From positions 10,168,001-10,232,000 of the forward strand of contig NC_047028.1 of the NCBI RefSeq assembly GCF_902652985.1: a DNA stretch of 64,000 nucleotides. Reading direction: 5' to 3'. The first letter of the stretch is position 1. Every line of letters begins with the position of its first letter. Positions 8,073 to 62,670 of this stretch are shown here, one piece after another. The notes beneath the pieces are model-generated. The model ran no database searches, had not been told where the DNA came from, and saw nothing but the letters and a program-made list of their open reading frames with translations. The position numbers were made by a program, and so were the translations under genes. The DNA is from Pecten maximus. Taxonomy: Eukaryota.

Positions 8073-10015
8073 ATGATTACAACAATGGCACATCAACCAC
8101 GTAAATATGCTAATGTAGCACCCAAACTACCTGGAAGAGAGCGAAAACCTTCAGCTTGTGAATCTTGTAAATGTACTAACTGTAATGATTACGAATCCTG
8201 TAACAGTTGTTCTGTGGTAAACGATGGTTACCTTAGAACAGTCCACGACGAAAAACCACCAGTTCCATGTCGACAAAGGAGATTCACAGACGATTTTTCT
8301 CCAGAGGTATGTTTTAGGGAATCTATGATACAAGAGGATACACCAAAACACGACACTAAACGAATGAAGGAGCTTGATATTCAACTACCATTGCCAAATA
8401 TACCTATTGATTTTCAAAAGCCTGAGCCATTTCAGCATAAGGTCCGGAAACCTTCTGACACCCTTCCCATTCCTAATGCAACAGCAACACCCCAGCCCCC
8501 GCTACACACACAAAGGGCTGATGTGGAACCCGAACATGTCACAACGAACAAAGTGGAACAGGGTCGGCTGGCACAGGTGGATATAACATTACCTAGAAGA
8601 AAAAGTGAGTCTAGAAAAAGAAGAACACGCCAACCTAGGAAAGTACATGTATGGATGAAATTTGGGACCATCGTTTCTATAGTTTTACTTATCGGATTGT
8701 CATATATGATCTTTAAAAGTATTAGAGATATTTGCTTTGCACCGTATCACTATAAAAGCACTTCTTCTCGTCATAAATGGAATTATTCTGAACCAAACGA
8801 ATCTAGACTCGATACAACTATATGTTTTTCATGTGACATAATTGATAAATTTAAAGGAGAGCAGAGTAGATTCGATTTATATGGCTTCAAATCTACCGGT
8901 AACAGACGGCATTGCTGTTTGGACCAACTTGGACATATGAAATGGCTCGTTAGTATGGTAAGTTGGGATGTGACCTTATCTCTGTGTATGTAAACGCATG
9001 TGAATGGGAGGTAACTCTATGAAACAAACTTTTGAATGAATAGATACATCTGATAATTTAAAGGCATAGTATGCTACAGGGTAAAACGTTCATATACTAT
9101 AACAAATTATAATTAGTGAATTTCCCTTAGTATGATTTCATTAGGAATAATTCAATGATTTCATTAGGAATAATTCAATCCCTTAGTATAATTTCATTAG
9201 GAATAATTCAATCTTTGCATTTTTATTCATTTTTTCATGTCTACTTATATAGTGTATTGGATTCAAACTGTAAAACAAACTTTAAAGAAAAAAAATATTT
9301 ATTTGTTTCAGATGAAAACGAATGAAATTTTGCAAGATGAAGTGAGGGACAATTCTTCGACTACAGTATGCCCAGTGAAGGCTACACTTGTGCCAATCCA
9401 AAATGGAAGTAAGTCTCTTATAAACATTTACCCTCTTACTCCTTCAGAAAATAACAACGGTATAATATACAATATATATATACCCATATGTATTGCGTAT
9501 TTTATTAAGAAAATCAATTTAATAAGACAGATCGTTGAAAAAAATGGTAATGTATATTTATGTATGTGGCATGTATCTTAAATTAATTATTATAATATTG
9601 TATAATTTCAGACAAGACCGATTTAAAACTGAACAATACGGCTTTGCAAACACACTGTAGAGGAGCTTCGATAAATGTGACAAAGGACGCCCTAGTGACC
9701 AGAAAGGACGGATTGTATATTGTGTACATGACTATGTCAGTAAAACTAGCTTCAAGACAAACAGAAGGGAACGGACAACATGGAAACATTGCATTGAAAG
9801 CATATCTTTTTTGCAGTAAATCTAAAAGGGGAAAATGTATTGAAATGGAGACATTTAACAAAACCATAACGTATAGTGACCAAAATTTTCATGTGTTTAA
9901 TTTGTACACCGTGAAAAAATTTACAAATGGAGAACACTTTTACCCAGTGCTGTCCGAGCCGGGATATCTATACACAACGACAAAGGGTAACTTTATCGGT
10001 GTTGTGGAACTTTGA
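8073..10015 (+). CDS. Gene A: divergent TNF-superfamily ligand-like type II membrane protein with a long cytoplasmic tail, ~461 aa. Coding exons 8073-8957, 9312-9408, 9612-10015
   Basis: Acceptor at 8041-42 precedes ATG 8073. Donors ATG|GTAAGT (8958, phase 0) and GGAA|GTAAGT (9409, phase 1) and acceptors TTTCAG (9311, 9611) join in frame. TM FGTIVSIVLLIGLSYMIF follows a polybasic stretch, and the stalk has CFSC…HCCL. The last exon has the THD motifs LVTRKDGLYIVY and GNFIGVVEL*. Confidence 0.82.
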
Positions 10016-10020
10016 ATTTG

Positions 10021-10024
<4 letters not shown>

Positions 10025-10074
<50 letters not shown>
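10025..10074. repeat. (GA)n microsatellite immediately 3' of the gene A stop
   Basis: Seen directly. Confidence 0.97.
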
Positions 10075-10077
<3 letters not shown>

Positions 10078-13019: not shown

Positions 13020-13140
13020 GTCCAGCTGGACTACCCGGAGAAAACCCACGTGGACAGACAGGTGACTCAAATCAAACCACGGCCGCCTAGGCGAAAGTCT
13101 GACCATCCAAAAGTGCTGCCAAACAGTGCCAGTCAAGCTC
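13020..13140 (-). mobile_element. SINE-like fragment
   Basis: The reverse strand reads GTGGGTTTTCTCCGGGTAGTCCAG, which resembles the conserved central domain of invertebrate tRNA-SINEs. Recognised from memory only. Confidence 0.35.
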
Positions 13141-14390: not shown

Positions 14391-15251
14391 ATGGCTGATC
14401 TGGTCGAACAATATTCAAGTCTGGAAACACTGTCAACTGACACGCTAAACATATGTAGATGTACTCACTGCTGTGAAAGTTACTCCAGTAACGATTCCTT
14501 TGGATACCTCGATGTTACCCCAGCTAAATTACCTATACCTTGTCCACAGAACCAACTCCCCGATTCCTTTTCTCCTGAGAAAAACTTTGTTGAAAGAACG
14601 AGAGTGAGTGAAGAACGCGAGTTAGATGGGAGACAAACAAACAAACGATGGCAAACTTCTTTTCCGTTTCAACAAGATGTCTTTCAGTTGGAGGGCAATT
14701 TGATTGAAAAATCAATTAGAAATGACAGCCAGGTGAAACAAAATGGTTCATGTCGACAAAATCAGTTACATGAAAAGTTTCAGACGGATATCAGTTGTGT
14801 GCCAACCACAAGTTGGGAAAATAATATAACAACGGCACGTGAGAGCCTTAGTCCAATGGCAAATGGTATTGAAATCCGAATGACTGTTGATGATCGGGTG
14901 ACTGGAAGGGGCAATCAACCATCAAATTTCACCTCTGCTCTCTTACCAGAACACGTCCGTCAACAACAGCATGCAGCGAGTTACAAATTTGTTCGATGTT
15001 ATCCTTTAGACGTATCTTCTCAGAATTCGCTTAAAGTACTTTCTTCTCGATGCTGGTATAGTCAACCATCATCTGGCGAATTACCTGATTCAAGTTCGGG
15101 GGGAATGATTCAGCCTCTGGTTTCTGGATGCAATATCAATCATAAACGAGGACAGAGCTGGATGCATGTGCAACGAAAAATCGGAATATTTTTCCCCGTC
15201 ATTATTTTCATTTGGTTAGTCTATATGCTCATTGAGAGTGTCTTTGAATAA
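14391..15251 (+). CDS. Gene B: paralog of gene A exon 1 (cytoplasmic tail + TM), 286 aa, ending just after the TM with no TNF domain. Either a truncated gene or a pseudogene
   Basis: Strong acceptor (T)nGCAG at 14359-60, ATG at 14391. CRCTHC…GYL…LPIPC…DSFSPE aligns with A's CKCTNC…GYL…PPVPC…DDFSPE. TM IGIFFPVIIFIWLVYMLIES aligns with A's FGTIVSIVLLIGLSYMIFKS. TAA at 15249. Confidence 0.65.
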   Translation: MADLVEQYSSLETLSTDTLNICRCTHCCESYSSNDSFGYLDVTPAKLPIPCPQNQLPDSFSPEKNFVERTRVSEERELDGRQTNKRWQTSFPFQQDVFQLEGNLIEKSIRNDSQVKQNGSCRQNQLHEKFQTDISCVPTTSWENNITTARESLSPMANGIEIRMTVDDRVTGRGNQPSNFTSALLPEHVRQQQHAASYKFVRCYPLDVSSQNSLKVLSSRCWYSQPSSGELPDSSSGGMIQPLVSGCNINHKRGQSWMHVQRKIGIFFPVIIFIWLVYMLIESVFE

Positions 15252-16256
15252 CCATGTGTATGTCATCGTTTTCATGTCTCTCAGAGACTATCAACCGCTA
15301 TTATGTATTCTTAAGTGTAACCTTTAACGACCGAAAATGAGATTCACACAACTTGACAATGCAAAGTCGGGTACTGTAGACAAGATACCGTGGATTATGT
15401 AGACTACAGCGAATATTTTTAATGGGACTAAAATTCTAGCTTACAATCAATTCATATGTAAGAATGATATCGTCAAGGACACAATACATGTGAATCAATC
15501 TTTAACAGGGTTAAATCAACACGGTATCCCGTGAAGCGATAAACGATAGGCACATGAACGAACACCGGGCATCCTATGCCTTTTTTGGATGTTATCATGA
15601 TCTTGGAAATATTCTATTTCCGTATGCAATATGAAGTCAGACGTTTTTGATGCCTGTTGATATACCCAATGGTTCCATTGTCACCACCCTAATTCACATG
15701 GAACACATCCGATTTTATGTCTCACAAGAATATATTTCCCCTAACGATATTATGACCTGCATCAATCCTTAGTACCCGAAACCATAAGTTCTTTTTGTAA
15801 GTGTTTCGTCGGTAGTCGAGATCTTTCGGAGTAAATGTGATATTCTTGAAATATCACGCGTTGAAACCCGGTGTTTTAATTTTCCATCTCGGCCAACATA
15901 TTGACATTCTAAGAAAGAATACTTATAATGTGTATTTTTGAACCATAACTCTTTACTTAAATTGAAACAACTGCAGTTTGTGAAAATGAAAGATCGTTTG
16001 ATATCTCAATCGTAGTATATACATACTTTACTAATCCTAATGTTTCATATACAAATGATAGGAAAAGATATTTCAACTGTTGATTCTGAGACGAATGCAT
16101 TGTATATTACATTGTTTCAAAAAGTATTTTAATTGATCTGTCCAATGGTATCAATCATGCAGATTTTGTAAGTTTAGTTGACCTGAACCAAAATCGTTGT
16201 TTACATTAGCTTGATAAACACCACCACTCTTTTACCATAATAATTAATTTGAATTA

Positions 16257-18999: not shown

Positions 19000-19415
19000 T
19001 GTAGGACGTTCCTGCTGCTACATGATCGTAAAAGGCGACTAAAGTTGGGATCTTATCTTTTCTCTATTTTTAAAGTTACTTTTGTCGTCCTTGTGTCTCT
19101 CTTGACGTTGACCTACTTTTGACCTGTAGGAAGGCTTTGTCTACTGGCCGAGCCATATACTCCTGAAGCTTTGGGAGTGAGACGACTGGTCCGCCCGTTG
19201 TCGGTATAATGTAATTTGGTGGAGTGTACTGCTGGATGTCTTCGGAAGTATACTCCATTGAGGTAGCACTATAGAGTCGGCATCATTTCCAAGTATTTCA
19301 CAAGGAGACAGGTACGAACATAAAGCACACACAATTCACTACACGCATGCACCTCGCACACAAGGAAGATGGCATTAGCTGTTGATAGGGCGTTAACAAT
19401 ACACAACCAAACAAA
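19000..19415 (+). mobile_element. SINE-like interspersed repeat
   Basis: CGTAAAAGGCGACTAAA motif and a 3' tail GCTGTTGATAGGGCGTTAA…CAACCAAACAAAA resembling invertebrate SINE ends. Not verified. Confidence 0.4.
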
Positions 19416-19915
19416 ATCTACATTAGCCGCTTTACCGTTCTATCCACCCGTGTACATTAATGGTACATGTATACCATATTTTTTTGTTCCTAACAAACTA
19501 CCAACGCCACCATGTAAGGATACTTTTTTTCTAAACAACCGGTCATTTTTGTTTATCTGGCCTATTAAAACAAACACAACAAAAATAATGACATAATAAT
19601 GAAACAATATAAACAAAAGTCACTGTAAGCTTTTGATATATCGACACCTCATGCCTGTGAGGGATTTATGTTTCCTTAATTAGTTCAAGAGTAATTTCCA
19701 GTTTAGATATGCCAATTGGAAGGCATGATATAATGTTGTATTTATACAGCCATTTGGATTTCCACATAAATAGGTCATGTGTTATCGCCTTACCAGGAAA
19801 TTATATTTTTCACCATACACGCGTTTATCAAAGTACTTGTTTCGTATCTCGCTGTGCAGACCTTTGGCGCACACTGCGATGTAATGTTCCTGGTTGATTA
19901 AAACCTTACCGTAGT

Positions 19916-22161
19916 ATGTCTAACTCTGTTCACTGTCAATTGAAACGCTTGATTCAAGCGAGTGTAGTTGGGAACGTTCTTTTGCTTGCTGCGCTAGTGA
20001 TCCTATATATAGTACATAAGACACTACAGGACCAGTCCCCAAACATCACACCAACACCAAGTGTGGACGCCCTGACAGACAATGCAGGACAGGTCTGTCT
20101 CCCCTGTGACTTTCAGGGACAACAATCGGGCGATACTTTGTACGAGTTCATATTGAAGACTGACAACAACAAAACACTTTGCTGTCTGCAACGCGATGAT
20201 GTTCTCCAGGATCTGATTCTTGAGGTGAGTCGTTTGTTTTATCGATTTATTGATTTATTCATTAAACCAGTGTCCTAATAATTCTGATGTTTGTTTAACG
20301 TTTTCATGTTTTTTGTTTTTGTTATTGCAGCTGGAAGAAGAGAACGGGAAAAGATTGCAAACAAACAGTGGAAAACGTAAGTCTTTTGTTATTACACTAC
20401 TTACAGTCAAACCTGTCATATGTGACCTTCCAAGACAATATAAAGGTCACATATGACATAAGCTCTCTTAATCCAGGTTCGGGAAACTAGTGTGGTAAAT
20501 AACATTTGGAGTGAAAACTTCGGCCACATATTAGAAGGAGACACTTAATTCAAGTGGTCACTTAACAGGTTTATTGTGTTTTGAAAACGTACCTTGAACC
20601 AAACGATATACCGCATTCAGGAGTTAGCATCACGTTGCCCTTTTACTTTTTACTGGTGCCACATCCAAACCTGTCTCATTACTACATCTTATATAAATCA
20701 GCGCTCACAAGGACTTCTAGGATTATTAGCACTGGACATCATCTATTAATGCCCCGTATCCCCTACCGTCCCAGCTTCTGTATCATCAGGAATCAGTTAA
20801 TCTAATCTGTTTCATTAACATTAATCGGACAGTCCCCGCATTATACCTACTTGATTACATGTTATTCGTAGGAGGTTACTAAGAGCGTTCCCCGGGGAAT
20901 AAGGAGTTTGTTCCGCGTCTGTATAAGTTAAATTATAATGATCTGGTGTAATGAAACACATATTGTAATAAGGTTAAGTATTGTTTAACGTGTTGCAAAC
21001 TTTTAAGAAATTTCTTCTGCTCAGACTAGTTTGATGTAATGAAAAAACGCGCACTGGTATGATATACACAGTATTACCACTATGTGAGATACCCTCTTTG
21101 AACTGAAGCCGCTTCCGCACTACAGAGATGATATGAAGTTACTATTATCCGTCATGTATATCTGAAATTATGCTGTAATGATTATTTTTTTACAAGTAAG
21201 GATTTAGAATGACATCTGTCTAACTTCTGCTATCTTACAGCCATACCAAAGACACTACGTTGGTGGACGGAGAGAAATCACGCCGCACATCTCTACGCTA
21301 GTGACATTCGAATTGGTCAAAGTAAGACATTTTCTCATTAGAAATCATTATAAACTGTAATATATCGTTTTGAAAACTTAATATGAAAATACACAAGGTT
21401 GCGAAATAAGTTATATCGGAAAGCATTACATTCATCCTCAGTACTTCCCTGTGCAATATGAAGGTTAATGTGTAAAATGAAAGGGAAAAGAAGCTCACCC
21501 TACCAGTAAGGAAATTCCATACCGTAAAATTTCCTATAGTAAAGCATTGGAAACATGCCTATTAAGGAACACCCTTGGCCTTGTACTTTATATGTTTCAA
21601 TGATAATTGTAGAATGTAGAATTAAGATATCATAAGCATGTTAATATACTCTATTTGTCTCTGTTAAATATATAAATGAACATCAATTACCGTTTATCTA
21701 TGTAAATTCTTTCACTCGTTTCGATAGATTTATCCTGGAAACAACGTGGCATCAGAACATCATTTATACGGAATCTGACGTTGAGTGATGACGGGAGGCA
21801 GTTGGCTGTTAACACGATGCCTGGTGCAGGATTGTATTTCGTTTATGCTCTATATACGTTTGACTTCACCAATGCAGCGACCAACAGACAATCACCAATG
21901 GGTATCCATAACATCTACAAACACCGACCGGCTATCATCAACAGTGAAAAAGAGAGACTTTGGACGGCGAAGTTTGGAGGCACCAACTCGGCGAAAAGAC
22001 AGACAAGCTTCCTTTGTGGAATCGTAAATATGAATATGTTGGACACAATAGAATCTGAGGCCATTTCCTATGTGGCAGGAGAAGAATGCACAACCAGATA
22101 TATAGACAGATCGCCATATTCTAATTATTTTGGCATGTTCAAACTAATTGATTTGTCGTGA
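19916..22161 (+). CDS. Gene C: TNF-superfamily ligand-like type II membrane protein, 289 aa. Exons 19916-20224, 20331-20376, 21241-21321, 21728-22161
   Basis: All introns are GT-AG with phases 0/1/1, and the 870 nt read in frame. TM VVGNVLLLAALVILYIV, stalk CLPC…LCCL, then RWWTERNHAAHLY, LSW, GAGLYFVY, TSFLCG, NYFGMFKL. AATAAA at 22237. Confidence 0.9.
20402..20578. mobile_element. Small MITE-like element in gene C intron 2
   Basis: Imperfect terminal inverted repeats TACAGTCAAACCTGT … ACAGGTTTATTGTG, which resemble Tc1/mariner-type ends. Confidence 0.5.
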
Positions 22162-23339
22162 CTACATTTACTGTTACTTACGGAATCATTGCACATGTAC
22201 TGCTATGTCTGTTCAGTGTTGACAACTGTTAAAACTAATAAAAGATATGGTGTTGCGAGATTTAGTTCTTTTTGCATGATACAATTTGACAATAGAGGGA
22301 ATATCCCGTTTGATGACTTTGATGTATACTTTCTCTAGACCGTAATTTTGCTGAATGGATTAGATCATTGCAGATGTAAGTCGTTTTAGCATTAAAATAA
22401 TCAGAATGGATAGAAAAAGATAAAATTGAACTGACACAATTTTAATGACTGCTTTATATAGATAATGGATTGAGGAAATGACAATTTAAAAACTTATATT
22501 TGGTCTGAGAATCGATTAAACTATTGCAAACACAAACCAAACAATATGTTTAATGATATATTTCCTTTAAAACGTACATGTAGAATAAGATCAGATAATA
22601 AAAAGACTTGACATATGAATATATTCAGTATAGACTATATGGTAGAATATTACCATTATACATGACAAAATAGCAATCCATCAGCCCCTTTTTGAAATTT
22701 GAGCTCGAATGAGCTTTTATAAGCATTTCTTTGATTAAAAAAAGAAAAGAAAAGAAAAAAGAGCATTTTTTATACAAGTGTTCTCCGTCATCAACTAAGC
22801 CGCTGATAAAATATAAATGGAAATTTGGCAATGTGATGTCAAAAATAATTCGCGATTGATAAATTCTGTTCTTAAGAAATACTCCAAATGTTTGTTCCTA
22901 CATACGTATTATAATTTTTTTATGTATTGATATGGTAAAATTTACTAGATTACTATATGTACTATGCCCATTTAAGCGATTTGATAAGTTTATTTGCTTT
23001 ACACACACAGCCCATACAAATAATCTGGTATTTTTACGGAATACCCAAACACATAATATGTAATCGTCCCTTGATAATAATAATGGGACAATCAAATACT
23101 GAGAAATGTATACTGTACACTATAACTGGTTCAAAACAATATCCTCAATCTAACCTGTTGTCACATTTAATCTCATCAAAAACCAAAGGGAACTGAACGT
23201 TAAATAAACAATGAAAGTTCTCTGCTATTTATGAAATAATCCCTATAACTTTGTTTTTACTGACTATACATGTATTTGTGATTGTTCTAGAGAATCATAC
23301 AAGTCTTGGTACTATAATATATCAGAGAACACTCGTTGT

Positions 23340-27740: not shown

Positions 27741-30700
27741 ATGGGTAGGATATTATGTACCTCGAAACAACCAGGCTACCTTGAAAACCTGAGGCGGGCA
27801 TTTCATTTCAGTGTTGCAGTAAACGTTGTATTGGTCACAATATTAGTGATTCTATTTGTTGTTCGTCAGACGCTTCGTAACAAAGACATTCCAGCTACTG
27901 CTACCCCGACAACAGAGCCCTTTCACAGATGATACAGCCGGACAGATATGTCTGCCTTGTGACTTCCAAGGACAGGAAACGGTCGATACTCTGTATGCGT
28001 TCATGCTGAAGACTGACAACAACAACACCCTTTGTTGTCTTAAGCATGATGATGATCTACAGAGCCTGGTTCTTGCGGTGAGCAGATTTACCGAATCAAC
28101 ATAAGATGTTTTAAACAATTGTTACATTGTTTTTTTTTTATTTATTTCTATTAGTTATTTTATTTTGTATTTCAGCTAGAAGAGGAAAACCGGAATAACA
28201 GACACTCCAGGCAGGGGACAGGTTTGTAGTATCAGTGTACTGCTTTTACTGTTTTCTACGAAAAGCACACATTATAATTTGTCTCTGGCAGGCCATGCTA
28301 CATTTAACGGAGGTATCGGGTGTCATCATGGTGTTGTGTCCCTTCAGTTAGTAGCTTGGAATTGGTGACTTCGCAGTAGTTAATTTCGGTTTGCCTTTTC
28401 AAAGCCAAAAATAGGAACTTATCATATATTTTCAAATGAATTAGCCCACTTCTCACATTGGATTGCCTTCTAGGCAGGCAAAGTTGAAAATATTTTTGAA
28501 ATTGACTTATTCACCTGATTTTTTGTTAAAGGACTTAGGCTCGGAAATCGTGAAAACATTATTTATATCAAATCCCTAACTCTCGTCGCCAAACAAATAC
28601 AACGTGTAAAATATAAGTAACCACAGACTGGTTAGAATATTAAGGGCTTGAATATATCGCAGCCCATTATTTCAAATGGTAAGGAAATATTGAAGTCTTT
28701 CAATAAAACTTCAGGGGATTTCGAGTAAAATTGCACTTTTATTTTACAAGATAAATTGCGATGGTGGACGGAGAGAAATCACGCCGCACACCTATACGCA
28801 AGTGACCATTCCGCTGGTTCAGGTGAGTAAACAATTTGACCAAAAAAGCAGTCCATATTTTACTGTTAAAACTGAAAAATAGCGTCGATTCATCAAGGGT
28901 TTGTACTGGATGGACTCCCGTCAATGTGTCATTGCAAAAACAAAAAAAAAAAAAAAAGGATTTCTAACCTTGTTACGAATTCCGGTTAACGTTGTAGTTA
29001 GATTTCCCTCACGAATAATAATAAAAAGGGGGGAAAAAAATCTGTGTTTAATCTTGTAACCAGGAAGTTATGTTTGAAGTATCTGCTGACCCATACTTGG
29101 TCAGAAAATTCACCTATATAAACGAAGCGTGTTGCATATCTATCATCATTCTCTAACGAAGGTCTATTATTCTAAACGTACTAGTAAATATAATACAGTG
29201 TATTAATATATACATTTTAAGCAACCTGGAAATGTAACCTTTATTTTTATTATTACCTTGATTACCTGCTTTACTGGCCCGTTGTGCTCAAAGACTCCTT
29301 ATATATACATGAAATAAATTTCATGTTTCAATTCAACTAGATATGTCCCTTAATCAGCTATATATTCATATATAATTAAAAGTAGATAATGTCCTTGTGA
29401 TGGATATACATTGTAATAATAATAATAAAAAAAACACAAACCAGATAATCACAAGCGCTTTCACAGGCTTTGAATGACAATGACCAAAAGTATACAAAAA
29501 TATAAAATTGATGACGTCAAAATAAAAATATATACAATTGAAAATTATATAAAGGAAAACAACTGTTTTTACAGTAATATTGATTTGGAACTAAGCAGAA
29601 CTACATGAATCAAGACTTGGTTTAAATAGATTAATAAACATATTTTCTTTTGATTCCCTTTCTATAGCATCTGAGCTAGACATTTGGTATATAGAACATC
29701 GGTACATATGTTTACTAACTGTTAAAAATCTTAGATGGTCTGTTCCTATTTGCTGTTAATGTACTGTCATACGTTTTATAATTTCGTTGTCAGTCTGGCC
29801 AATGTAAAATTCTGAACAATTTTTGCAAATCATAGCATAGATAACAATTTTAAATATACAATTCATATTTGCTTTGATTTGAAATTTAGATCCGTTTTTG
29901 AACGTATAACTGGAACATTCTATAATACTTTTAAATGTACCACATCTAGGCCTACCACATTTAGATATACATGGAATTTGCTGTTCAGAATCAGATTTTG
30001 AACGGCATAATAAACGTTTCAAATTTCTTGGTTGTCGCTTACAATTTGTGATTTTATTTCTGTCTAATACCTTTTTCATCTTGTCACTATTCTTAAGAAA
30101 ATCTTCACAACTTCTAATGATTGGAAAGATATTAAAATCTAAATAATTGTGTGAATCTGTTGGTTTACAATATAGATCAGTAGTAATAATGTTGTCTTTC
30201 AATTCTACTAAATCATCAAGAAATGGTGAATGTATAAAAAAAAAAAAATAACGAAAAAACAAGACTTTGCCGCGCTGGCCTTTCAGCCCTCTCAGGCTTC
30301 TGCAGGCGGACTGAACATATAGGAGTAACGATTAAAGTACTTGTCTTATTTTGAAATAATGTGTTGTCTTCATTGTCTATACAAATGTAATTTATTCTGC
30401 TATGTTATAAAAGGTTTATCCTGGAACCATCGTGAAAGCAGGACGTCACTTTTACGGAATTTGACGTTAAGTGATGACGGGAGACAGCTGGCTGTTCACA
30501 CGATGCGAGGAGCAGGAAGTTACTTCGTCTATGCCTTATATACGTTTGACTTCAGCAACGCAACGTGGGACAGAAAATCACCAATAGGCGTCCACAACAT
30601 CTACAGACACCGCCCGACTATCATCAACGCCGAAAAACAAAGACTGTGGACGGCGAAGTTTCGTGGCGAAAAAAACGACGAAAAGACAGACGAGTTTCCT

Positions 30701-30848
30701 TTGTGGAATCGTTAACATGAACATTCATGACACTTTAGAATCCGAGGCCATTTCGTATGTAGCAGGAGAGGAGTGCACGTCCAAATGCATTGACGGATCG
30801 CCATATTCCAACTTTTTTGGCATGTTCAAACTTATCGAGTTTACCTGA
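27741..30848 (+). pseudogene. Gene D: closest paralog of gene C, with two +1 frameshifts (pseudogene or assembly indel errors). Exons 27741-28077, 28176-28221, 28751-28822, 30414-30848
   Basis: Same exon phases and motifs as C (CLPC…LCCL, RWWTERNHAAHLY, GAGSYFVY, TSFLCG, NFFGMFKL). There is an extra T in TTT at 27921-23 and an extra A in A7 at 30669-75. Splice sites are intact and I saw no other stops. Confidence 0.85.
29620..30235 (-). mobile_element. Penelope-like retroelement fragment (RT C-terminus + GIY-YIG endonuclease) in gene D intron 3
   Basis: ORF 29756..30262 contains TDLYCKPTDSHNYLDF, RQPRNLKRLL, CGRPRCGT and NC…VIYAMICKNCSEFYIGQT. Confidence 0.85.
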
Positions 30849-31599
30849 CTAAACTTCTGATGCAACAAAGTTATTGTTCTGGTATTATTGCTCAGTAAAA
30901 AAGATCAAATAAAACAAGGAACTGTTTTCTGTTCTGCAAATGATTTTCCTTCAATGACACCAATAAACAATAGACTCGTACGACAATAATTTATGTCTAG
31001 ATAAAGTATCACCATTTAAGATGGTTTTATCCGATCATCAAATATTGAAAATATAAAAAGTGCAATATATATATGAATATGCTATGGATAAAACACGCGT
31101 GAAACGGGAACATATATTAAGAAGCGAAATTTTCTAGTAAGAGACTGGGCAGCCCGATATCCTGACATGATCATAGCAAAACAGCGTCTATAAGATTATA
31201 TGAATACCTGGATGGCAAGGTGATATGCATGCACCAGTGAGAATTGTACACAAATAACATATATTTCAAATCCTTAATTTCAACAGAACAGAGTGAATAT
31301 GATATATTGTGTAAATGATTAGATATACAACGTAGTAAAACAAATGAGGAAGGAAGATGAATGTTTGATTCCTACCCAGACCAGGCCTGGTATACGTAAA
31401 TATCTACACTTAATATGAAATACAAATGTAGAAACATTAACAGCATAATTTACTTGTAAACAATGCATACACTAGGAAACACACAAGTACATGACCGGAC
31501 AACAGAAAGAAAGCCAATATATAGGACTTGATAAATCCACAACAAATGTGTATGTAAAATTAGCCATCTAAGAAGGAGTGAACTTGTTACATAGTTGAA

Positions 31600-34500
31600 C
31601 GGTAGAGAATTGAAAAGATGGTACAAACATAGAACAGTAGAATATTGACAAAGTTGGTACAAACATAGAACAGTAGAGTATTGATAAAGTTGGTACAAAC
31701 ATGGACAGTAGAGTATTGACAAAGTTGATACAAACATAGAACAGTAGAGTATTGACAAAGTTGATACAAACATAGAACAGTAGAGTATTGACAAAGTTGA
31801 TACAAACATAGAACAGTAGAGAATTGACAAAGTTTGTACAAACATAGAACAGTAGAATATTGACAAAGTTGGTACAAACATAGAACAGTTAAGTATTGAC
31901 AAAGTTGGTACAAACATAGAACAGTAGAGTATTGACACAGTTGGTACAAACATGGACAGTAGAATATTGACACAGTTGGTACAAACATGGACAGTAGAAT
32001 ATTGACAAAGTTGGTACAGACATAGAACAGTAGAGAATTGACAAAGTTGGTACAAACATGGACAGTAGAGTATTGATAAAGTTGGTACAAACATGGACAG
32101 TAAAGTATTGACAAAGTTGGAACAAACATGGACAGTAGATTATTGACAAAGTTGGTACAAAAATAGAACAGTAGAGTATTGACAAAGTTGGTACAAACAT
32201 GGACAGTAGATTATTGACAAAGTTGGTAAAAAACATAAAACAGTAGAATATTGACAAAGTTGGTACAAACATGGACAGTAGAGAATTGACAAAGTTGGTA
32301 CAAACATGGACAGTAGAGTATTGACAAAATTGGTACAAACATGGACAGTAGATTATTGATAAAGTTGGTACAAACATGGACAGTAGATTATTGATAAAGT
32401 TGGTACAAACATGGACAGTAGAGAATTGACAAAGTTGGTACAAACATACAACAGTAGAGAATTGACAAAGTAGTACAAACATAGAACAGTAGAGTATTGA
32501 CAAAGTTGATACAAACATAGAACAGTAGAGTATTGACAAAGTTGGTACAAACATGGACAGTAGAGTATTGATAAAGTTGGTACAAACATGGACAGTAAAG
32601 TATTGACAAAGTTGGAACAAACATGGACAGTAGATTATTGACAAAGTTGGTACAAAAATAGAACAGTAGAGTATTGACAAAGTTGGTACAAACATGGACA
32701 GTAGATTATTGACAAAGTTGGTAAAAAACATAAAACAGTAGAATATTGACAAAGTTGGTACAAACATGGACAGTAGAGAATTGACAAAGTTGGTACAAAC
32801 ATGGACAGTAGAGTATTGACAAAATTGGTACAAACATGGACAGTAGATTATTGATAAAGTTGGTACAAACATGGACAGTAGATTATTGATAAAGTTGGTA
32901 CAAACATGGACAGTAGAGAATTGACAAAGTTGGTACAAACATACAACAGTAGAGAATTGACAAAGTAGTACAAACATAGAACAGTAGAGTATTGACAAAG
33001 TTGATACAAACATAGAACAGTAGAGTATTGACAAAGTTGGTACAAACATGGACAGTAGAGTATTGACAAAGTTGGTACAAACATAGAACAGTAGAGAATT
33101 GACAAAGTTGGTACAAACATGGACAGTAGAGTATTGACAAAGTTGGTGCAAACATAGAACAGTAGAGTATTGTCAAAGTTGGTACAAACATAGAACAGTA
33201 GAGTATTGACAAAGTTGATACAAACATAGAACAGTAGAGAATTGACAAAGTTGGTACAAACATAGAACAGTAGAGAATTGACAAAGTTTGTACAAACATA
33301 AAACAGTAGAATATTGACAACGCTGGTACAAACATAGAACAGTTAAGTATTGACAAAGTTGGTACAAACATAGAACAGTAGAGTATTGACAAAGTTGGTA
33401 CAAACATGGACAGTAGAATATTGACAAAGTTGGTACAGACATAGAACAGTAGAGAATTGACAAAGTTGGTACAAACATGGACAGTAGAGTATTGATAAAG
33501 TTGGTACAAACATGGACAGTAAAGTATTGACAAAGTTGGAACAAACATGGACAGTAGATTATTGACAAAGTTGGTACAAACATAGAACAGTAGAGTATTG
33601 ACAAAGTTGGTACAAACATGGAACTGTAGATTATTGACAAAGTTGGTAAAAAACATAAAACAGTAGAGTATTTAAAGTTGGTACAAACATGGACAGTAGA
33701 GTATTGACAAAGTTGGTACAAACATAGAACAGTAGAGAATTGACAAAGTTGGTACAAACCTGGACAGTAGAGTATTGACAAAGTTGGTACAAACATAGAA
33801 CAGTAAAGTATTGACAAAGTTGGTACAAACATGGACAGTAGAGAATTGACAAAGTTGGTACAACCATGGACAGTAGAGTATTTTTAAAGTTGGTACAAAC
33901 ATGGACAGTAGAGTATTGACAAGTTGGTACAAACATTGAACAGTAAAGTATTGACAAAGTTGGTACAAACATCGACAGTAGAGTATTGACAAAGATGGTA
34001 CAAACATAGAACAGTAGCGAATTGACAAAGTTGGTACAAACATGGACAGTAGAGTATTTATCAAGTTGGTACAAACATGGACAGTAGATTATTGACAAAA
34101 TTGGTACAAACACGGACGGTAGAGTATTTTTAAAGTTGGTACAAACATGGACAGTAGAGTATTGACAAAGTTGGTACAAACATAGAACGGTAGAGAATTG
34201 ACAAAGTTGGTACAAACATGGACAGTAGATTATTGATAAAGTTGGTACAAACATGGACAGTAGAGAATTGACAAAGTTGGTACAAACATAGAACAGTAAA
34301 GTATTGACAAAGTTGGTACAAGCATGGACAGTAGATTATTGATAAAGTTGGTACACATATAGAACCGTAAAGTAATGACAAAATTGGTACAAACATGGAC
34401 AGTAGATTATTGATAAAGTTGGTACAAACATGGACAGTAGAGAATTGACAAAGTTGGTACAAACATAGAACAGTAGAGTATTTTTAAAGTTGGTACAAAC

Positions 34501-37500: not shown

Positions 37501-38150
37501 ATCGGTACAAATATAGAAAAGTAAAGTATTTACAAAGTTGGTACAAACATAAAACAGTAGAGAATTGACAAAGTGGTACAAACATGGACAGTAAGAGTAT
37601 TGACAAAGTTAGTACAAACATAGAACAGTAGAGTATTTTTAAAGTTGGTACAAACATAGAACAGTAGAGAATTGACAAAGTTGATACAAACATAGAACAG
37701 TAGAATATTGACAAAGTTGGTACAAACATAGAACTGTAGAGAATTGACAAAGTTGGTACAAACATGGACAGTAGAGTATTGATAAAGTTGGTACAAACAT
37801 AGAACAATAGATTATTGACAAAGTTGGTACAAACATGGACAGTAGATTATTGACAAAGTACGTACAATCATGGACAGTAGAGTATTGACAAATTTGGTAC
37901 AAACATAGAACAGTAGAGAATTGACAAAGTTGGAACAAACATAGAACAGTAGAGTATTTTTAAAGTTGGTACAAACATGGACAGTAGATTATTGACAAAG
38001 TTGGTACAAACATAGAACAGTAGAGAATTGACAAAGTTGATACAAACATAGAACAGTAGAGTATTGACAAAGTTGGTACAATTATAGAACAGTAGAGAAT
38101 TGACAAAATTGGTACAAATATAGAACAGTAGAAAGGAAGTTGGTACAAAA
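31600..38150. repeat. ~6.5-kb minisatellite of mixed 35/36-bp units (GTACAAACAT[AGA/GG]ACAGTAGAGTATTGACAAAGTTG), roughly 185 copies
   Basis: Direct tandem array. All minus-strand ORFs here are translations of the repeat. Higher-order periods of ~495 bp (32060-33050) and ~285 bp (36630-37250). Confidence 0.98.
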
Positions 38151-54234: not shown

Positions 54235-54838
54235 ACCTCCGCTCTTCCTGACTCCTCCAGCTCTCCTCACATACAGTGATTGATCAATACTGACTCATTC
54301 AGCTCTCCTCACATACAGTGATTGATCAACCCTGACTCCTCCAGCTCTCCTCACATACAGTGATTGATCAACCCTCACTCCTCCAGCTCTCCTCACATAC
54401 AGTGATTGATCAACCATAACTCCCCCAGCTCTCCTCACATACAGTGATTGATCAACACTGACTCCTCCAGCTCTCCTCACATACAGTGATTGCTCAACCA
54501 TAACTCCTCCAGCTCTCCTCACATACAGTAATTGATCAACCATAACTCCTCCAGCTCTCCTCACATACAGTGATTGATCAACCATAACTCCTCCAGCTCT
54601 CCTCACATACAGTAATTGATCAACCATAACTCCTCCAGCTCTCCTCACATACAGTGATTGATCAACCCTGACTCCTCCAGCTCTCCTCACATACAGTAAT
54701 TGATCAACCATAACTCCTCCAGCTCTCCTCACATACAGTGATTGATCAACCCTGACTCCTCCAGCTCTCCTCACATACAGTGATTGATCAACCGTGACTC
54801 CTCCAGCTCTCCTCACATACAGTGATTGATCAACCCCG
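54235..54838. repeat. 42-bp minisatellite (CTCCTCCAGCTCTCCTCACATACAGTGATTGATCAACCCTGA), about 14 copies
   Basis: Direct tandem array. ORF 54295..54816 is its translation. Confidence 0.97.
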
Positions 54839-55737: not shown

Positions 55738-57914
55738 ATGGAAAATACCGACTTTAGTCGCTGTAGAAAAACAGCCATCTATCATAGCATGAAAAACGTC
55801 TTAAAAGTGAGCGCTCTAGGAAATATCATACTTTTACTGATATTGTTGTGTTTGAAATCTTTGTTACCGTGGGCTGATGTAGCCTTACCACCGCCTACCA
55901 CTGCCTATCGAGGCGCTCAAACAGAAACAACCAACGTTGGAAGCGGAGCAGTTTGCATAGCATGTAGTTTCTATGGCAAAGACTTTCGGACCACTCTCTA
56001 TGATAATATCATCACAACAAACAGCAATGTCACCTTATGTTGTTTGGATAATGACACCTTTATACAGGATGTCATCTTAGAGGTATGTGACAGAAACAGA
56101 CAATTAAATAATTATCTGGGTTATCCATCCATTTGAATTGTTTTCATAAATTAACACGGTTAAAATGTTTAATACATTTGCCACAATTATCATCTAATTT
56201 CATATTATTTTAAGGCAACGACCGAGTAGGCCCGATGATTTAAGTGTTGTTAGGTGTTTCGTTTGAGACTCATTGATTTTTGATGACTTTTGTAGCTGAT
56301 TGAAAGCGTGTCAGTTTATAAAGAATTTTATTTGAAAAGACTGAATCTTAAACATTTGAATTATCTGTATTAAACAGAATTTAAAGAAATAAGTTACTTT
56401 ATAAAGATTTCATGAAATAGTGATATGCATTGAAAGATAAAGCGGCACATTTGAGCGTTTTTTTTATCTGACTATCTTTTATAATGAATGGCTGGAAAAT
56501 TGATGGAAAGCTTTGTGTATGGTTGTGTATATCTCAAAAGAGAAAAAAACAACTTGTACAGAAACCATTCTGTTATTACAGTTGGCTGACTCACCGGGTA
56601 ACCAATATGTCTATGAAGGACGTAAGTTTGTGATTCTATTTTACTACTGTTGGTGATTTGTTCATAAATATTAGCGCTTCATGAAAAAAATATACTCTGG
56701 CTCATATACAATATCGCTATCTAGGGTAAAAAGGGCGAGCGAGTTTTATGTTACATATCCATACTGATTATTCAGCAGATACAAATGTACAATATCTATC
56801 GACCATCAACCATGCTAATGTAGTAAAATGATTATATCCATTTGCATTAATATTTGCTCTAATATAATTTCCTTCCAGAATCAGTTCACAAACTAAATTG
56901 GTGGACTGAACGAAATTATGCTGCACATCTTTATGCTGACTACCGTTCCGATGACAGAAGTATGTATTTACTTCAAATTAACGTTATGGTTGATGTTAGT
57001 GGTAACTTGGTTTATTGAGCTTCAAATCATACAATGTTGAAGTTACTGTGATCGGTGACCTGATTTATGGAGCTTCAAATTATACAATGTTTTGGTTGAT
57101 GTGATTGGTGAACTGGTTTATGGAGCTTCAAATCTTTGACACAACTATGCACAATTATCAAATATCAACGTACATGTAGAACTATCGGTTGGGAATAATT
57201 TATGGGGCAAATGTTTTGTTTGTTTGTTGTTTTTTTTTCTTCTTCATTTCATTGATTTCGTTTCATCAAATCACATTCAGATATTAAATAAGAAGTATCG
57301 TTGATAGGCCTTATATTCTATTAATGAGAACAGATATTTGTGTGTGTTGTTATTTTGAGGTGAAGTTATCCAATCTAGTTTTCAAACTATCAGAAACATC
57401 AGAATAGAAACGTATTACATTGTAATCATCCTTAACAGGTATAACATCATATCGTATTTGTCTCTGTTTCAAAGCTTTAACATGGACCACCACAAGACAC
57501 AGTACGTCATTCCTACGAAACCTAAAACTGTCTACTGACGACAAGAGGAAACTGACCGTCCCTGATACAGCTGGCGCAGGCAATTACTTCGTATATTCCA
57601 TGATCACTTTTGATTTCCTTAACGAAGCAATCATTAAACACAAACAGATAATCACACACATCATTCATAAATCTAACAATCCACTAGGAAACTATGAAGG
57701 AAGAGATAATTGGCTTTGGCATTCGACATTCGGAGATGAGGATATGTCTACACGACAGACATCTTATCTCAGTGGTGTTATAAGTCTAAGCCCGTCGGAC
57801 ACCATTTGGGTAGAAGCATTCTCATTCTCCCGAATAGAACGTGATTCATCAGCAAAATATATCGATGTCTCCTCGCTATACAATAACTTTTTTGGAATGT
57901 TTAAACTAGATTAA
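55738..57914 (+). CDS. Gene G: TNF-superfamily ligand-like protein, 301 aa. Exons 55738-56082, 56582-56621, 56879-56959, 57475-57914
   Basis: GT-AG introns with phases 0/1/1, 906 nt in frame. TM ALGNIILLLILLCL, CIAC…LCCL, NWWTERNYAAHLY, LTW, GAGNYFVYS, TSYLSG, NFFGMFKL. Confidence 0.9.
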
Positions 57915-58955: not shown

Positions 58956-61900
58956 ATGGAGGACGTTACCAAGAGTAAGTGTTATATTAGGTTAAAACTG
59001 GCATATAAGGTGTCCATGGTACTCAATGTTGTGATTGTTATGGCACTGATTTGTCTGTATCTAACACGACAATTTTATGACCGTAATCTGCAGGACACTA
59101 CACTTTTACAGCAGTCACATGTAGATACAATACCCGACACAATATGTCTGTCCTGTTCTTATTTCGGTGAAGCGATTCAGACCGAGGAAAATGTTTTATA
59201 TGACAACATATTTAAGACACAAGGAGGCCATCTGTGCTGTTTCCACGATGAACATGGAATTCAAGATATGTTTTTAAAGGTAAGTTGGTTATTTCATCTT
59301 TTCTGGTAGATCTATAAAGCTGTGCATACAAATGTTGATAAAAATAAAAATCTGTTCCAAATCGCAAATGTATTGCCGATTGTTGTTGAAAAAAAATATT
59401 ATAGTATGCCTATTTCTAGATAATCAAGCGTTCTATGATAATGTATAGAACAGATAGAGTTTCGGGAAAATTCTATCAACATTTTATATCATTTTTCCTA
59501 GCAAGGTAAATGAGCTGTTCCTAGTACTGTAATTATTTTCGCCTGTAGTACCATTCAGCTATAATATTCATATATAATATCGAATTTAATCTTTACTTAA
59601 CGAAATAATGCTTCAATAACTAATGTTAACATGTTCATGTATTTCTATATAAAAATCTTATACAGAATTTAATGGATGATACGTTTTGTCAGTTTGATGG
59701 ATGATGGGCGAAATCATATTTTTTTAGTTTGAAATATATTGCTAGTAATATTTACCCATTTTGACAGATGCTGAACGAAGAAAACATGAATGAATCATCA
59801 TCTTCATCAGATGAAGGTATGTGCAAAGCCATTTAAGAATGATAGTATTTTGTCATTTGAATGATATCATTATGAAATATAACTTTGAATATTATCTTGT
59901 TCCAAATTAATTAATTTTCCTGTATATTGTCAGGGTAATTATGCAATACCAAATCGTGTGAAACTATTTGCTGAGTACCTTGTAGATATAAAATAAGATA
60001 CACACCCTGAAAAACAGCGTGGAAATGTCATCAAGAATCATGAGAACATTTCATTTCAGTGTTCTTTCAGAAAGTTTTATGTTTTAATCAAAGTATTTTT
60101 ATAATATTTCCATTCGATAAGGGGTGACCCGAAGGATGCAATGGTGGCGAAACCGGGATTTCTCTGCTCATTTATACCGTGAATCTACCAATATACCTGG
60201 TAGGTATTTTATTTATACGGTTACTCTATCAATATACCAGGTCAGTATAACATTTAAATCGTTACTCTATCAATATACCAGGTCAGTATAACATTTATAC
60301 CGTTACTCTATCAATATATCAGGTAAATATAACATTTATACCGTTACTCTATCAATATATCAGGTAGGTATAACATTTAAATGGTTACTCTATCAATATA
60401 TCAGGTAAATATAACATTTATACCGTGCTTCTATCAATGTAGCAAGTAAGTATAACATTCATAGAGTAAGTTTATCGGTGTAACAAGTAAGTATAACATT
60501 TATATAGTGAGTCTATTGATGTAGCAAGTAAGTATTACATTGATATAGTGACTTTATCGATGCAAAAAGTAATTATAACATTCATACAATGTCTCTATCG
60601 AGGTACCAAGTAAGTATAACATTCATACAATGTCTCTATCGAGACACCAAGTAAGTATAACATTCATACAATGTCTCTATCGAGGTAACAAGTAAGTATA
60701 ACATTCATACAATGTCTCTATCGAGGTAACAAGTAAGTATAACATTCATACAATGTCTCTATCGAGGTAACAAGTAAGTATAACATTCATACAATGTCTC
60801 TATCGAGGTAACAAGTAAGTATAACATTCATACAATGTCTCTACCGAGGTAACAAGTAATTATAACATTCATACAATGTCTCTATCGATGTAACAAGTAA
60901 TTATAACATTTAAATAATGTCTCTACCGAGGTAATAAGTAATTATAACATTCATACAATGTCTCTACCGAGGTAACAAGTAATTATAACATTCATACAAT
61001 GTCTCTATCGATGTAACAAGTAATTATAACATTCATACAATGTCTCTATCGAGGTAACAAGTAATTATAACATCCATACAATGTCTCTATCGTGGTAACA
61101 AGTAATTATAACATTCATACAATGTCTCTATCGAGGCACCAAGTAAGTATAACATTCATACAATGTCTCTATCGTGGTAACAAGTAATTATAACATTCAT
61201 ACAATGTCTCTATCGTGGTAACAAGTAGTTATAACATCCATACAATGTCTCTATCGAGGTACCAAGTAAGTATAACATTCATACAATGTCTCTATCGTGG
61301 TAACAAGTAGTTATAACATTCATACAATGTCTCTATCGAGGCACCAAGTAAGTATAACATTCATACAATGTCTCTATCGAGGTAACAAGTAGTTATAACA
61401 TCCATACAATGTCTCTATCGAGGCACCAAGTAAGTATAACATTCATACAATGTCTCTATCGAGGTAACAAGTAGTTATAACATCCATACAATGTCTCTAT
61501 CGAGGTACCAAGTAAGTATAACATTCATACAATGTCTCTATCGTGGTAACAAGTAGTTATAACATTCATACAATGTCTCTATCGAGGCACCAAGTAAGTA
61601 TAACATTCATACAATGTCTCTATCGTGGTAACAAGTAATTATAACATGCATACAATGTCTCTATCGAGATACCAAGTAAGTATAACATTTATATAATGTC
61701 CTTATCGATGTAAACGCGTAACGTTTTGCAGATATTTCATGCACATGCAACTCAACCTCGGGACATGGATTAATACAAACTACATAAACAATTCTTATAA
61801 TACAGTCGTAGAAATCATGAGAATGTGTCCTTGCAAACTGATCAATGAATATGGTATGTGATAATTTCCAAAAGAAATGTGCGTGTGAGTGGTGTAAAAT

Positions 61901-62670
61901 ATTGTGCGTTTGAGTGGTATTGTATATTTCCATAAGCTATACACAATCGTCTATTACAACCATTTGACCATTTGAGATTCAATTTTATCTTTTACATTAA
62001 AAAGAATTAAATAAATTACATCCGGAAGGAACTGTCATACTCAACTCAATATTGACTTTTAATTTGTAATTTTCGATCTGATATGCCATCATTTTGGGAC
62101 ACTGTTATTATTGTTGTTCTTTTTATAATTTGTAGGTTTTTTGTTGGTGTTGATATTCTTGTAAACATTCCATTTTAAGCAGTTTTGTGGCAAATAGTGT
62201 GTACACTCTCGGCGGTATACATGTAGCGTGTTGATACAATGTCATTATATTTTGCAGGAAGTGATATGACGTGGACTTCTAAGGATTTTTTAGGAACTGG
62301 CTTCATCAGAAATTTAACATTGTCCGAAAAGTCAAAAATCCAATTGGACGACGGACTGGGAGCAGGAATGTATTTTATATATTCTTTGATCACAGTGACA
62401 TCTAACAATCCCTCAAGGCGTCTCCCAGAGGGTGCTCATATTATAAACAAATCTAATAAGGAAGTGTTAAATAATATCCCATCCAGTCTGGCATTCAGAC
62501 GTTTTGGTGGAAATAACAATGAGAAAAATGACTCTTACACTAGTTTTCTGTGTCTAACGGAGTATCTGAATATAGGTGACGAAATTGAAACAAAGCTAAC
62601 AATAAAAAATGTGTCAAATTATGGAAACGGTGGAATGTTCTCAAATTACTTCGGAATGTTCAAACTATAA
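58956..62670 (+). CDS. Gene H: TNF-superfamily ligand-like protein, 287 aa. Exons 58956-59279, 59768-59816, 60122-60199, 62258-62670
   Basis: GT-AG introns with phases 0/1/1, 864 nt in frame. TM VSMVLNVVIVMALICLYL, CLSC…LCCF, QWWRNRDFSAHLY, MTW, GAGMYFIYS, TSFLC, NYFGMFKL*. Confidence 0.88.
60169..61710 (+). repeat. 41-bp minisatellite (~37 copies) starting inside gene H exon 3 and filling most of intron 3
   Basis: Units start at 60169, 60210, 60251, 60292 and so on. Later units read CATTCATACAATGTCTCTATCGAGGTAACAAGTAAGTATAA. Confidence 0.95.

What the first reader, a model, noticed from the sequence alone, without database searches (positions are those of the whole stretch)
8073..62670. Tandem array of eight TNF-ligand-like loci caught in birth-and-death evolution
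Seen: eight co-oriented loci in 55 kb. Five are intact (A, C, F, G, H), one is frameshifted (D), one lacks the ectodomain (B) and one is an exon-1 relic (E). C/D/F/G/H share a 4-exon, phase 0/1/1 structure but span close (C-D) to very distant (G, H) divergence. C-vs-D substitutions appear to cluster in inter-strand loops (TNAATNRQ vs SNATWDRK; GGTNSA vs RGEKTT). Established: AAHL, xxW, GxYxxY and FGxFxL are THD hallmarks, and TNF ligand expansions are known in molluscs. Inference: a lineage-specific, diversifying cytokine cluster whose members standard annotation may miss because the THD is split by micro-exons and is divergent (the usual YSQV glutamine is absent in all copies).
Basis: partly seen in the sequence, partly recalled or inferred. 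Interest (0 to 1): 0.85.

Follow-up and report, generated by a model that had tools for sequence, protein, structure and literature searches.

The report
Scallop TNF-ligand gene cluster
This stretch of the king scallop (Pecten maximus) genome carries a real tandem row of TNF-family cytokine genes with one dead copy and one fragment, but most of them already have gene models in the public annotation, the row is shared with other scallops, and it fits the known expansion of this family in molluscs.

Summary
Eight co-oriented loci lie at 8073-62670 on the + strand. My spliced models of A, C, F and H equal RefSeq proteins of Pecten maximus letter for letter. G is a full open model. D has two +1 frameshifts. 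E is a piece of exon 1. B is an ORF that stops five codons after its membrane anchor.

RNA contigs from four studies show the four exons of C with GT..AG introns and phases 0/1/1. Pfam TNF passes its cut-off for C, F, G and part of D; H and A fall below it. AlphaFold models of C and A match solved TNF ligands (LIGHT, FasL, CD40L, TNF-alpha, RANKL), not C1q. A C-head trimer scores 0.85 against 0.07 for the best control.

The same gene order is seen in Mizuhopecten for A, a B-like gene, then F, G, H and a ninth gene I. F, G and H have supported orthologues in other scallop genera. So the expansion dates to the scallop family, not to Pecten. C-D gives dN/dS 0.23, and the loop bias of changes is the same between orthologues, so diversifying selection is not shown. 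The annotation did not miss five of the genes. Mollusc TNF expansions are published. This is an ordinary new member of a known kind.

The parts
8073..10015 (+). Gene A (LOC117342692, 461 aa). Coding exons 8073-8957, 9312-9408, 9612-10015. It has a cytoplasmic tail of about 198 aa, a membrane anchor at 199-217, a four-cysteine stalk and a divergent TNF head.
   Evidence: The spliced model equals P0071. Pfam TNF scores 15-19 bits, below the cut-off of 23. The Mizuhopecten orthologue P0072 scores 23.4 bits. The AlphaFold head matches TNF-alpha, RANKL and FasL at TM 0.65-0.77.
14391..15251 (+). Locus B. A 286-codon ORF with an A-like cytoplasmic region and a C-terminal hydrophobic anchor, then a stop. 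No ectodomain was found.
   Evidence: It is 42% identical to the A tail over 52 aa. It is 37% identical over 79 aa to the start of a 423-aa gene next to A in Mizuhopecten. No stalk or THD hit in 15100-19900. No database protein of 157-500 aa matched.
19828..22181 (+). Gene C (LOC117342352, 289 aa). Coding exons 19916-20224, 20331-20376, 21241-21321, 21728-22161. The transcript as seen spans 19828-22181.
   Evidence: RNA contigs of runs X1, X2, X3 and X15 carry all three GT..AG joints. The model equals P0066. Pfam TNF 34-37 bits. Predicted fold and trimer.
27741..30848 (+). Locus D, a pseudogene of the C lineage. Exons 27741-28077, 28176-28221, 28751-28822, 30414-30848. One extra base in exon 1 gives an in-frame TGA at 27930-27932. 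One extra base sits at the A-run 30669-30675 in exon 4.
   Evidence: Alignment to C and exon lengths of 337 and 435 nt. RefSeq models only a 164-aa truncated product, P0006. C-D dS 1.0, dN/dS 0.23.
31597..38132 (.). A 6.5-kb satellite (35/71-nt unit) that separates the A-D half of the row from the E-H half.
   Evidence: Tandem Repeats Finder: 184 copies, 87% matches.
44720..45218 (+). Locus E. A relic of the 5' flank and the first ~57 codons of F's exon 1 (ORF part 45045-45215). It breaks off where a 1.6-kb repeat begins; that repeat also lies upstream of F.
   Evidence: 79% protein identity to F exon 1. DNA homology 44720-45218 to 50032-50566, and 45229-46822 to 48666-50309. dS 0.18 over 56 codons.
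50396..51915 (+). Gene F (LOC117342642, 285 aa). Exons 50396-50704, 50828-50876, 51243-51305, 51479-51915.
   Evidence: The model equals P0069. Pfam TNF 30-32 bits.
55738..57914 (+). Gene G (301-aa model). Exons 55738-56082, 56582-56621, 56879-56959, 57475-57914.
   Evidence: Open spliced frame with canonical sites. Pfam TNF 36 bits on exon 4. 56% identical over its length to Mizuhopecten P0003, and in a clade with it at 100/100.
58956..62670 (+). Gene H (LOC117342223 isoform X2, 287 aa). Exons 58956-59279, 59768-59816, 60122-60199, 62258-62670. Strand A reads SAHLY.
   Evidence: The model equals P0002. Pfam TNF 17-19.5 bits, below the cut-off. In a clade with Mizuhopecten P0007 at 100/99.
60169..61713 (+). 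A 41-nt minisatellite (about 35 units) in H's intron 3. It is seeded from the last 31 nt of exon 3 plus the splice donor.

Best explanation
The window is Pecten maximus chromosome contig C14:10168001-10232000. It carries a tandem cluster of TNF-superfamily ligand genes.

Each intact member (A, C, F, G, H) encodes a type II membrane protein. The parts, in order, are a cytoplasmic tail, one membrane anchor, a stalk with four invariant cysteines (CxxC...CC), a short linker encoded by a micro-exon, and a C-terminal TNF homology domain. That domain folds as a jelly roll and is predicted to form a homotrimer.

By analogy with characterised TNF ligands, the trimer would bind cysteine-rich TNF receptors in the grooves between its subunits, either on the membrane or after shedding. 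It would then drive TRAF/NF-kB, JNK or apoptotic responses. This last step is inferred, not shown.

The cluster arose by tandem duplication in the scallop lineage, before Pecten, Mizuhopecten and Argopecten split. Since then it has lost one copy to frameshifts (D), kept a partial duplicate of F (E), and holds a tail-plus-anchor ORF without a head (B).
For: Organism and gene identity: my spliced models equal RefSeq proteins of Pecten maximus.

Expression and exon structure of C: RNA contigs of four studies carry three GT..AG joints.

Family:
- Pfam PF00229 passes its cut-off for C (36.7 bits), G (36.0), F (32.3) and D part 1 (23.3). No C1q hit appeared at E up to 10.
- AlphaFold model of C: pLDDT 79.9 overall and about 90 in the head. 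The top solved matches are LIGHT, FasL, CD40L, TNF-alpha and TRAIL at TM 0.73-0.83.
- The model of A matches TNF-alpha, RANKL and FasL.
- Each protein has one strongly hydrophobic 19-aa segment ahead of the ectodomain.
- Trimer of C residues 128-289: score 0.85, best of 3 controls 0.07, runs agree in at least 92% of contacts, partner pLDDT at least 78. The mark was reached by 21 of 30 solved homomers and 0 of 23 single chains.

Age of the cluster:
- Trees give scallop-only clades for H (100/99), G (100/100) and F (97/98), and for C-H as a whole (98/95).
- The Mizuhopecten scaffold NEDP02000871.1 shows the same order and strand for the genes seen there.
- C-D dS is about 1. All other pairs are saturated.
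Against: - H and A fall below the Pfam cut-off.
- The model of A was built with an alignment made mostly of C-type sequences, which may pull it towards the TNF fold.
- The trimer score may come from the model's memory of solved TNF trimers. The calibration used two copies, not three.
- No receptor, ligand binding, shedding or immune induction was tested.
- RNA evidence was obtained for C only.
- D's second break lies in a run of seven A, where long-read assemblies make errors.
Confidence: 0.9

Rival explanations
1. One reading: a young, Pecten-specific cytokine cluster under diversifying selection, whose members the annotation overlooks.
For: A pseudogene and a relic are present. The E-F pair is fairly young, with dS 0.18. 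C-D differences are enriched outside strands. The gene names are only 'uncharacterized protein'.
Against: Orthologues and the same gene order exist in other scallop genera. C-D dN/dS is 0.23 and dS about 1. The same loop bias is seen in orthologue pairs, with odds ratios 2.6-3.7. RefSeq models exist for A, C, D, F and H.
Confidence: 0.08
2. D is an intact gene, and its two frameshifts are assembly errors.
For: The exon-4 break sits in a run of seven A. All D splice sites are kept. C-D dN/dS of 0.23 shows long constraint.
Against: There are two independent breaks in one gene, and the exon-1 break is not in a long homopolymer. RefSeq models a truncated 164-aa product rather than a corrected full-length one.
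Confidence: 0.15
3. The heads are C1q-like or some other jelly-roll domain, not TNF ligands.
For: C1q and TNF share a fold. H and A fall below the Pfam TNF cut-off.
Against: No C1q hit appeared even at E 10. All listed Foldseek matches (ranks 1-50 for C, 1-47 for A) are TNF-family ligand entries. The proteins are type II membrane proteins without a signal peptide or collagen stalk. H and A group or align with C-type TNF genes and share the stalk motif.
Confidence: 0.02

Closest known systems
Molluscan TNF-superfamily ligands. The expansion in Crassostrea gigas was described by Gao et al. 2015 (Dev Comp Immunol 51:251), cited here from the reference list of PMC12843592. A preprint reports up to 27 paralogs in one mollusc (bioRxiv 10.1101/2024.07.27.603686). 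Single genes characterised include MgTNF-3 (PMC11869874) and PmTNF (PMC12367993).
   Same: Type II anchor plus C-terminal THD, many paralogs, tandem arrangement and low identity to vertebrate ligands. Relatives of C-H occur in Pinctada, Mytilus, Saccostrea, unionid mussels and Haliotis.
   Different: This particular scallop cluster has not, as far as I found, been described as a unit. I saw the four-cysteine stalk shared by A and C-H mentioned in none of the papers read.
Vertebrate TNFSF ligands LIGHT (TNFSF14), FasL, CD40L, TNF-alpha and TRAIL
   Same: Predicted head fold (TM 0.73-0.83 to solved chains), predicted homotrimer, AAHL-type strand A and a C-terminal FGxF motif.
   Different: Only 18-24% identity. 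The Gln of the YSQV motif is absent. There is an extra cysteine stalk module and a conserved WW(R/T)ER motif before strand A. No one-to-one orthology.
The orthologous cluster of Mizuhopecten yessoensis on scaffold NEDP02000871.1 (OWF54838-54840, LOC110467418, LOC110467401)
   Same: Same order and strand for the genes seen there: A, a B-like gene, then F-lineage, G, H and I. The C-like P0070 lies on the same scaffold, position not seen. UniProt already labels three of them 'THD domain-containing' or 'TNF family profile domain-containing'.
   Different: No E-like relic lies in the 10 kb upstream of the F-lineage gene. The B-like gene is annotated at 423 aa, against a 286-codon ORF in Pecten. The 42 kb between it and the F-lineage gene could not be fetched.

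Membership tests
TNF superfamily ligand (TNFSF) | TNF homology domain recognised by the sequence profile (Pfam PF00229, cut-off 23 bits) | tested here: met
   Met for C (36.7 / 34.1 bits), G (36.0), F (32.3 / 30.2) and the first piece of D (23.3). Not met for H (19.5 / 17.2) or A (18.8 / 15.1). A's Mizuhopecten orthologue scores 23.4.
TNF superfamily ligand (TNFSF) | Jelly-roll head whose closest structures are TNF ligands rather than C1q | tested here: met
   Predicted models only. C matches LIGHT, FasL, CD40L, TNF-alpha and TRAIL at TM 0.73-0.83. A matches TNF-alpha, RANKL and FasL at TM 0.65-0.77.
TNF superfamily ligand (TNFSF) | Type II membrane topology: N-terminal tail, a single anchor and a C-terminal head | tested here: met
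   Each protein has one 19-aa window of mean hydropathy 2.0-3.0 ahead of the ectodomain. The C model has a long helix at residues 3-39. Topology itself is inferred.
TNF superfamily ligand (TNFSF) | Homotrimer through the head | tested here: met
   Prediction for C only: score 0.85, best control 0.07. The pass may come from memory of solved TNF trimers. Not measured.
TNF superfamily ligand (TNFSF) | Binds a TNFR-type cysteine-rich receptor and signals | not testable with these tools
   No receptor was identified or tested.
C1q domain proteins | C1q profile match, with a signal peptide and often a collagen stalk | tested here: not met
   No PF00386 hit at E up to 10. The proteins have an N-terminal anchor rather than a signal peptide. 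No C1q among the listed structural matches.

The most novel reading that the evidence does not exclude
The stalk between anchor and head is not a plain spacer. It may be a small folded, disulfide-bonded module (CxxC...TLY(D/E)...CC) that defines a mollusc-wide TNF-ligand subfamily and takes part in trimer stabilisation or receptor or co-receptor contact.

Its four cysteines are invariant in 32 bivalve and gastropod sequences, and also in the very divergent gene A. That makes them as conserved as the core residues of the head.
Probability: 0.3. Interest if true: 0.45.

Novelty: new member of a known kind. Interest (0 to 1): 0.27.

Why it matters
The result gives a checked, exon-level map of one TNF-ligand cluster in the king scallop. 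It includes a pseudogene, a gene fragment and a headless ORF, and it shows that the cluster is older than the split of the main scallop genera. That is useful for annotation, since these genes are still named 'uncharacterized protein'. It is also useful for choosing candidates in scallop immunity work. It does not change what is known about TNF evolution in molluscs.

Tried and rejected
- C1q reading: rejected.
- A hidden ectodomain for B: tblastn with the ectodomains of A, its Mizuhopecten orthologue and C against 15100-19900 gave nothing below E 0.2. A database search with the B ORF found nothing at 157-500 aa.
- The Mizuhopecten 423-aa B-like protein could not be fetched. Only its first 153 residues lie in L002.
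- P0070's locus could not be fetched, because only the longest product of a gene is on record.
- Own-genome records are withheld from the look-up of encoding contigs.
- Whether D is sister to C alone could not be settled. The free tree puts D outside the C orthologues with weak support, and a C+D clade is not rejected (p-AU 0.25).
- Site-wise dN/dS was not attempted, because silent sites are saturated in every pair except C-D and E-F.
- Searching the stalk module alone by features found no usable hit. By structure it matched only a mollusc THD cluster, plus noise.
- Joined models: the spliced G model and the D read-through (X at both breaks) were built and used only in local scripts for alignment, trees and substitution counts. 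They were not sent to any search or folding tool. Searches used exons by reference, or database proteins that equal the spliced models.
Full report
**What is there**

The long open frames carrying GxYxxY...FGxFxL hit Pfam TNF (PF00229, cut-off 23 bits), and nothing else of note appeared at E up to 10:

| Locus | Bits |
|---|---|
| C | 36.7 |
| G | 36.0 |
| F | 32.3 |
| D, first piece | 23.3 |
| H | 19.5 |
| A | 18.8 |

A tblastn of all pieces against the window showed three things. C, D, F, G and H are paralogous in both the first and the last exon. The 45018-45305 frame (E) matches only the start of F's exon 1, at 79%. The A and B first exons share a weak match (42% over 52 aa).

**Gene models**

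RNA contigs from four runs of four studies lie on C as 19828..20222(4) / 20329(31)-20376 / 21241-21321 / 21728-22181. All three joints are GT..AG and the introns have almost no cover. This gives four coding exons with intron phases 0/1/1 and a 289-aa product.

A profile of the four last exons was searched against 1.84 billion representative proteins. It found only 57 relatives at E up to 0.001.

The source names identify the organism as Pecten maximus. My spliced models of C, F, H and A equal RefSeq proteins exactly:

| Locus | Protein id | RefSeq gene |
|---|---|---|
| C | P0066 | LOC117342352 |
| F | P0069 | LOC117342642 |
| H | P0002 | LOC117342223 isoform X2 |
| A | P0071 | LOC117342692 |

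G has a full open model with canonical splice sites. A has three coding exons, with phases 0/1.

The micro-exon (46, 46, 49, 40 and 49 nt in C, D, F, G and H) encodes the linker before the head. The next short exon carries strand A (AAHLY; SAHLY in H).

**The broken copies**

- D keeps all its splice sites. Its exon 1 is 337 nt and its exon 4 is 435 nt, each one base too many. The first break gives a TGA at 27930-27932. The second lies in the A-run 30669-30675. RefSeq models only a 164-aa product, from an internal Met to the second break (P0006).
- E is the 5' flank plus about 57 codons of F's exon 1. It ends where a 1.6-kb repeat begins, and that repeat also lies upstream of F.
- B is a 286-codon ORF. 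Its N-terminal part resembles the cytoplasmic tail of A, and it stops five codons after a hydrophobic segment. No stalk or head exon was found in the 4.8 kb before C. No database protein of 157-500 aa matches it.

**Family membership**

- The AlphaFold model of C, built with an alignment of 32 sequences, has mean pLDDT 79.9 and about 90 in the head. Its best solved matches are LIGHT, FasL, CD40L, TNF-alpha and TRAIL at TM 0.73-0.83 by target. No C1q chain is among the listed matches.
- The model of A has a head at 318-461 with pLDDT 65-92. It matches TNF-alpha, RANKL and FasL. Its alignment was mostly C-type sequences, which is a caveat.
- Every protein has one strongly hydrophobic segment ahead of the ectodomain.
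- Three copies of C residues 128-289 gave a score of 0.85 against 0.07 for the best of three controls. The runs agree in at least 92% of contacts and the partner pLDDT is at least 78. The mark was reached by 21 of 30 solved homomers and 0 of 23 single chains. The calibration used two copies, and the pass may come from memory of solved TNF trimers.
- Receptor binding and signalling are inferred from the family, not shown.

**Age and mode of evolution**

In the protein trees the scallop sequences form one clade against Pinctada, Mytilus and other bivalve relatives (98/95). Within it:

| Clade | Support |
|---|---|
| H with Mizuhopecten P0007 | 100/99 |
| G with Mizuhopecten P0003 and Argopecten P0062 | 100/100 |
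| F with Argopecten P0004 | 97/98 |

C, D, P0070, P0067, P0068 and P0001 are not resolved. A C+D clade is not rejected (p-AU 0.25).

The Mizuhopecten scaffold NEDP02000871.1 shows, on one strand, A (P0072), a B-like 423-aa gene, then P0001, G, H and a further TNF gene. The C-like P0070 lies on the same scaffold, but its position was not seen.

Nei-Gojobori estimates:
- C-D: dS 1.0, dN 0.235, dN/dS 0.23.
- All other pairs: silent sites saturated.
- E-F: dS 0.18 over 56 codons.

C-D amino-acid differences are commoner outside strands (odds ratio 2.75, p 0.014). The same holds for C against its Argopecten orthologue (2.6), its Ylistrum orthologue (3.7) and F (4.2). So the bias is the usual behaviour of a beta sandwich, not a sign of diversifying selection.

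The cluster is therefore a scallop-family expansion that predates the split of these genera, with later decay of D and a later partial copy, E.

**Beyond the window**

- A ninth TNF gene (I) lies about 3-5.5 kb past the window's end (last exon 38.3 bits). Its orthologue follows H in Mizuhopecten.
- A broken copy (J), nearer to Pinctada P0010, lies about 29-36 kb past the end.
- All 15 Pfam TNF matches in the genome are on contig C14, apart from one unplaced contig that duplicates a C14 hit.

**What is known already**

TNF-ligand expansion in molluscs is published. Gao et al. 2015 on Crassostrea gigas is cited in PMC12843592. A preprint reports up to 27 paralogs in one mollusc and notes that Mizuhopecten paralogs group with oyster ones (10.1101/2024.07.27.603686). 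Single mollusc TNFs have been shown to respond to LPS or bacteria (PMC11869874, PMC12367993). I found no paper describing this scallop cluster as such.

The genes are annotated but named 'uncharacterized protein'. UniProt labels the Mizuhopecten orthologues 'THD domain-containing' or 'TNF family profile domain-containing'.

- The joined G model and the D read-through (X at each break) were used only in local scripts.

Noticed in passing
window 20096-20185 (C residues 61-90); the same motif in A, D, F, G and H: Four cysteines in the stalk (CxxC ... TLY(D/E) ... CC) are invariant in 32 bivalve and gastropod TNF ligands, and also in the divergent gene A. AlphaFold gives a small strand-plus-helix module there (pLDDT 68-78). 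Pfam has no model for it, and the only sensible structural match is a cluster of 140 mollusc THD proteins.
   Followed up: partly
L003 2865-5441 (66865-69441 if window numbering is continued; beyond the window): A ninth TNF-ligand gene (I) of another subtype lies on the same strand about 4 kb after H. Its last exon scores Pfam TNF 38.3 bits. Its orthologue (283 aa) follows H in Mizuhopecten.
   Followed up: partly
L005 9024-9209 and L006 5667-6081 (about 93.0-100.1 kb if window numbering is continued): A further TNF-like copy (J), closer to Pinctada P0010 than to C-H. It has a frame change inside the last exon, and the genome search reports one TGA. It is probably another pseudogene.
   Followed up: partly
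G000 contig C14 (whole chromosome): All 15 Pfam TNF matches in the 918-Mb genome lie on this one chromosome contig, at about 10.2, 18.0, 19.65-19.71, 25.4, 27.4, 36.1 and 36.9 Mb. The one exception is an unplaced contig that scores the same as a C14 hit. The count is a lower bound.
   Followed up: partly
window 60169-61713: The 41-nt minisatellite in H's intron 3 starts inside exon 3. Its unit is a copy of the last 31 nt of exon 3 plus the splice donor, so the intron carries about 35 tandem donor-like sites (CAG|GTAAGT-like). RefSeq lists H as 'isoform X2', so alternative donors may be in use.
   Followed up: partly
window 8073-8666 (A residues 1-198) and 14391-15180 (B): A and B share a long cytoplasmic region with a cysteine cluster (C-x-C-x2-C...) and a P-V-P-C-R-Q ... 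F-S-P-E motif. The motif is conserved in the Mizuhopecten A orthologue and in the B-like gene. The model of this part is of low confidence.
   Followed up: partly
window 31597-38132, 1-2625, 4533-5096, 54247-54836: Large tandem arrays: a 6.5-kb satellite (35/71-nt unit) between D and E, a 23-nt minisatellite of 115 copies at the window's start, and 28-nt and 42-nt arrays.
   Followed up: no
window 23404-24926 (+); L003 5573-6339 (-): Reverse-transcriptase-like open frames of a non-LTR retroelement lie between C and D. A near-identical piece lies just after gene I.
   Followed up: no
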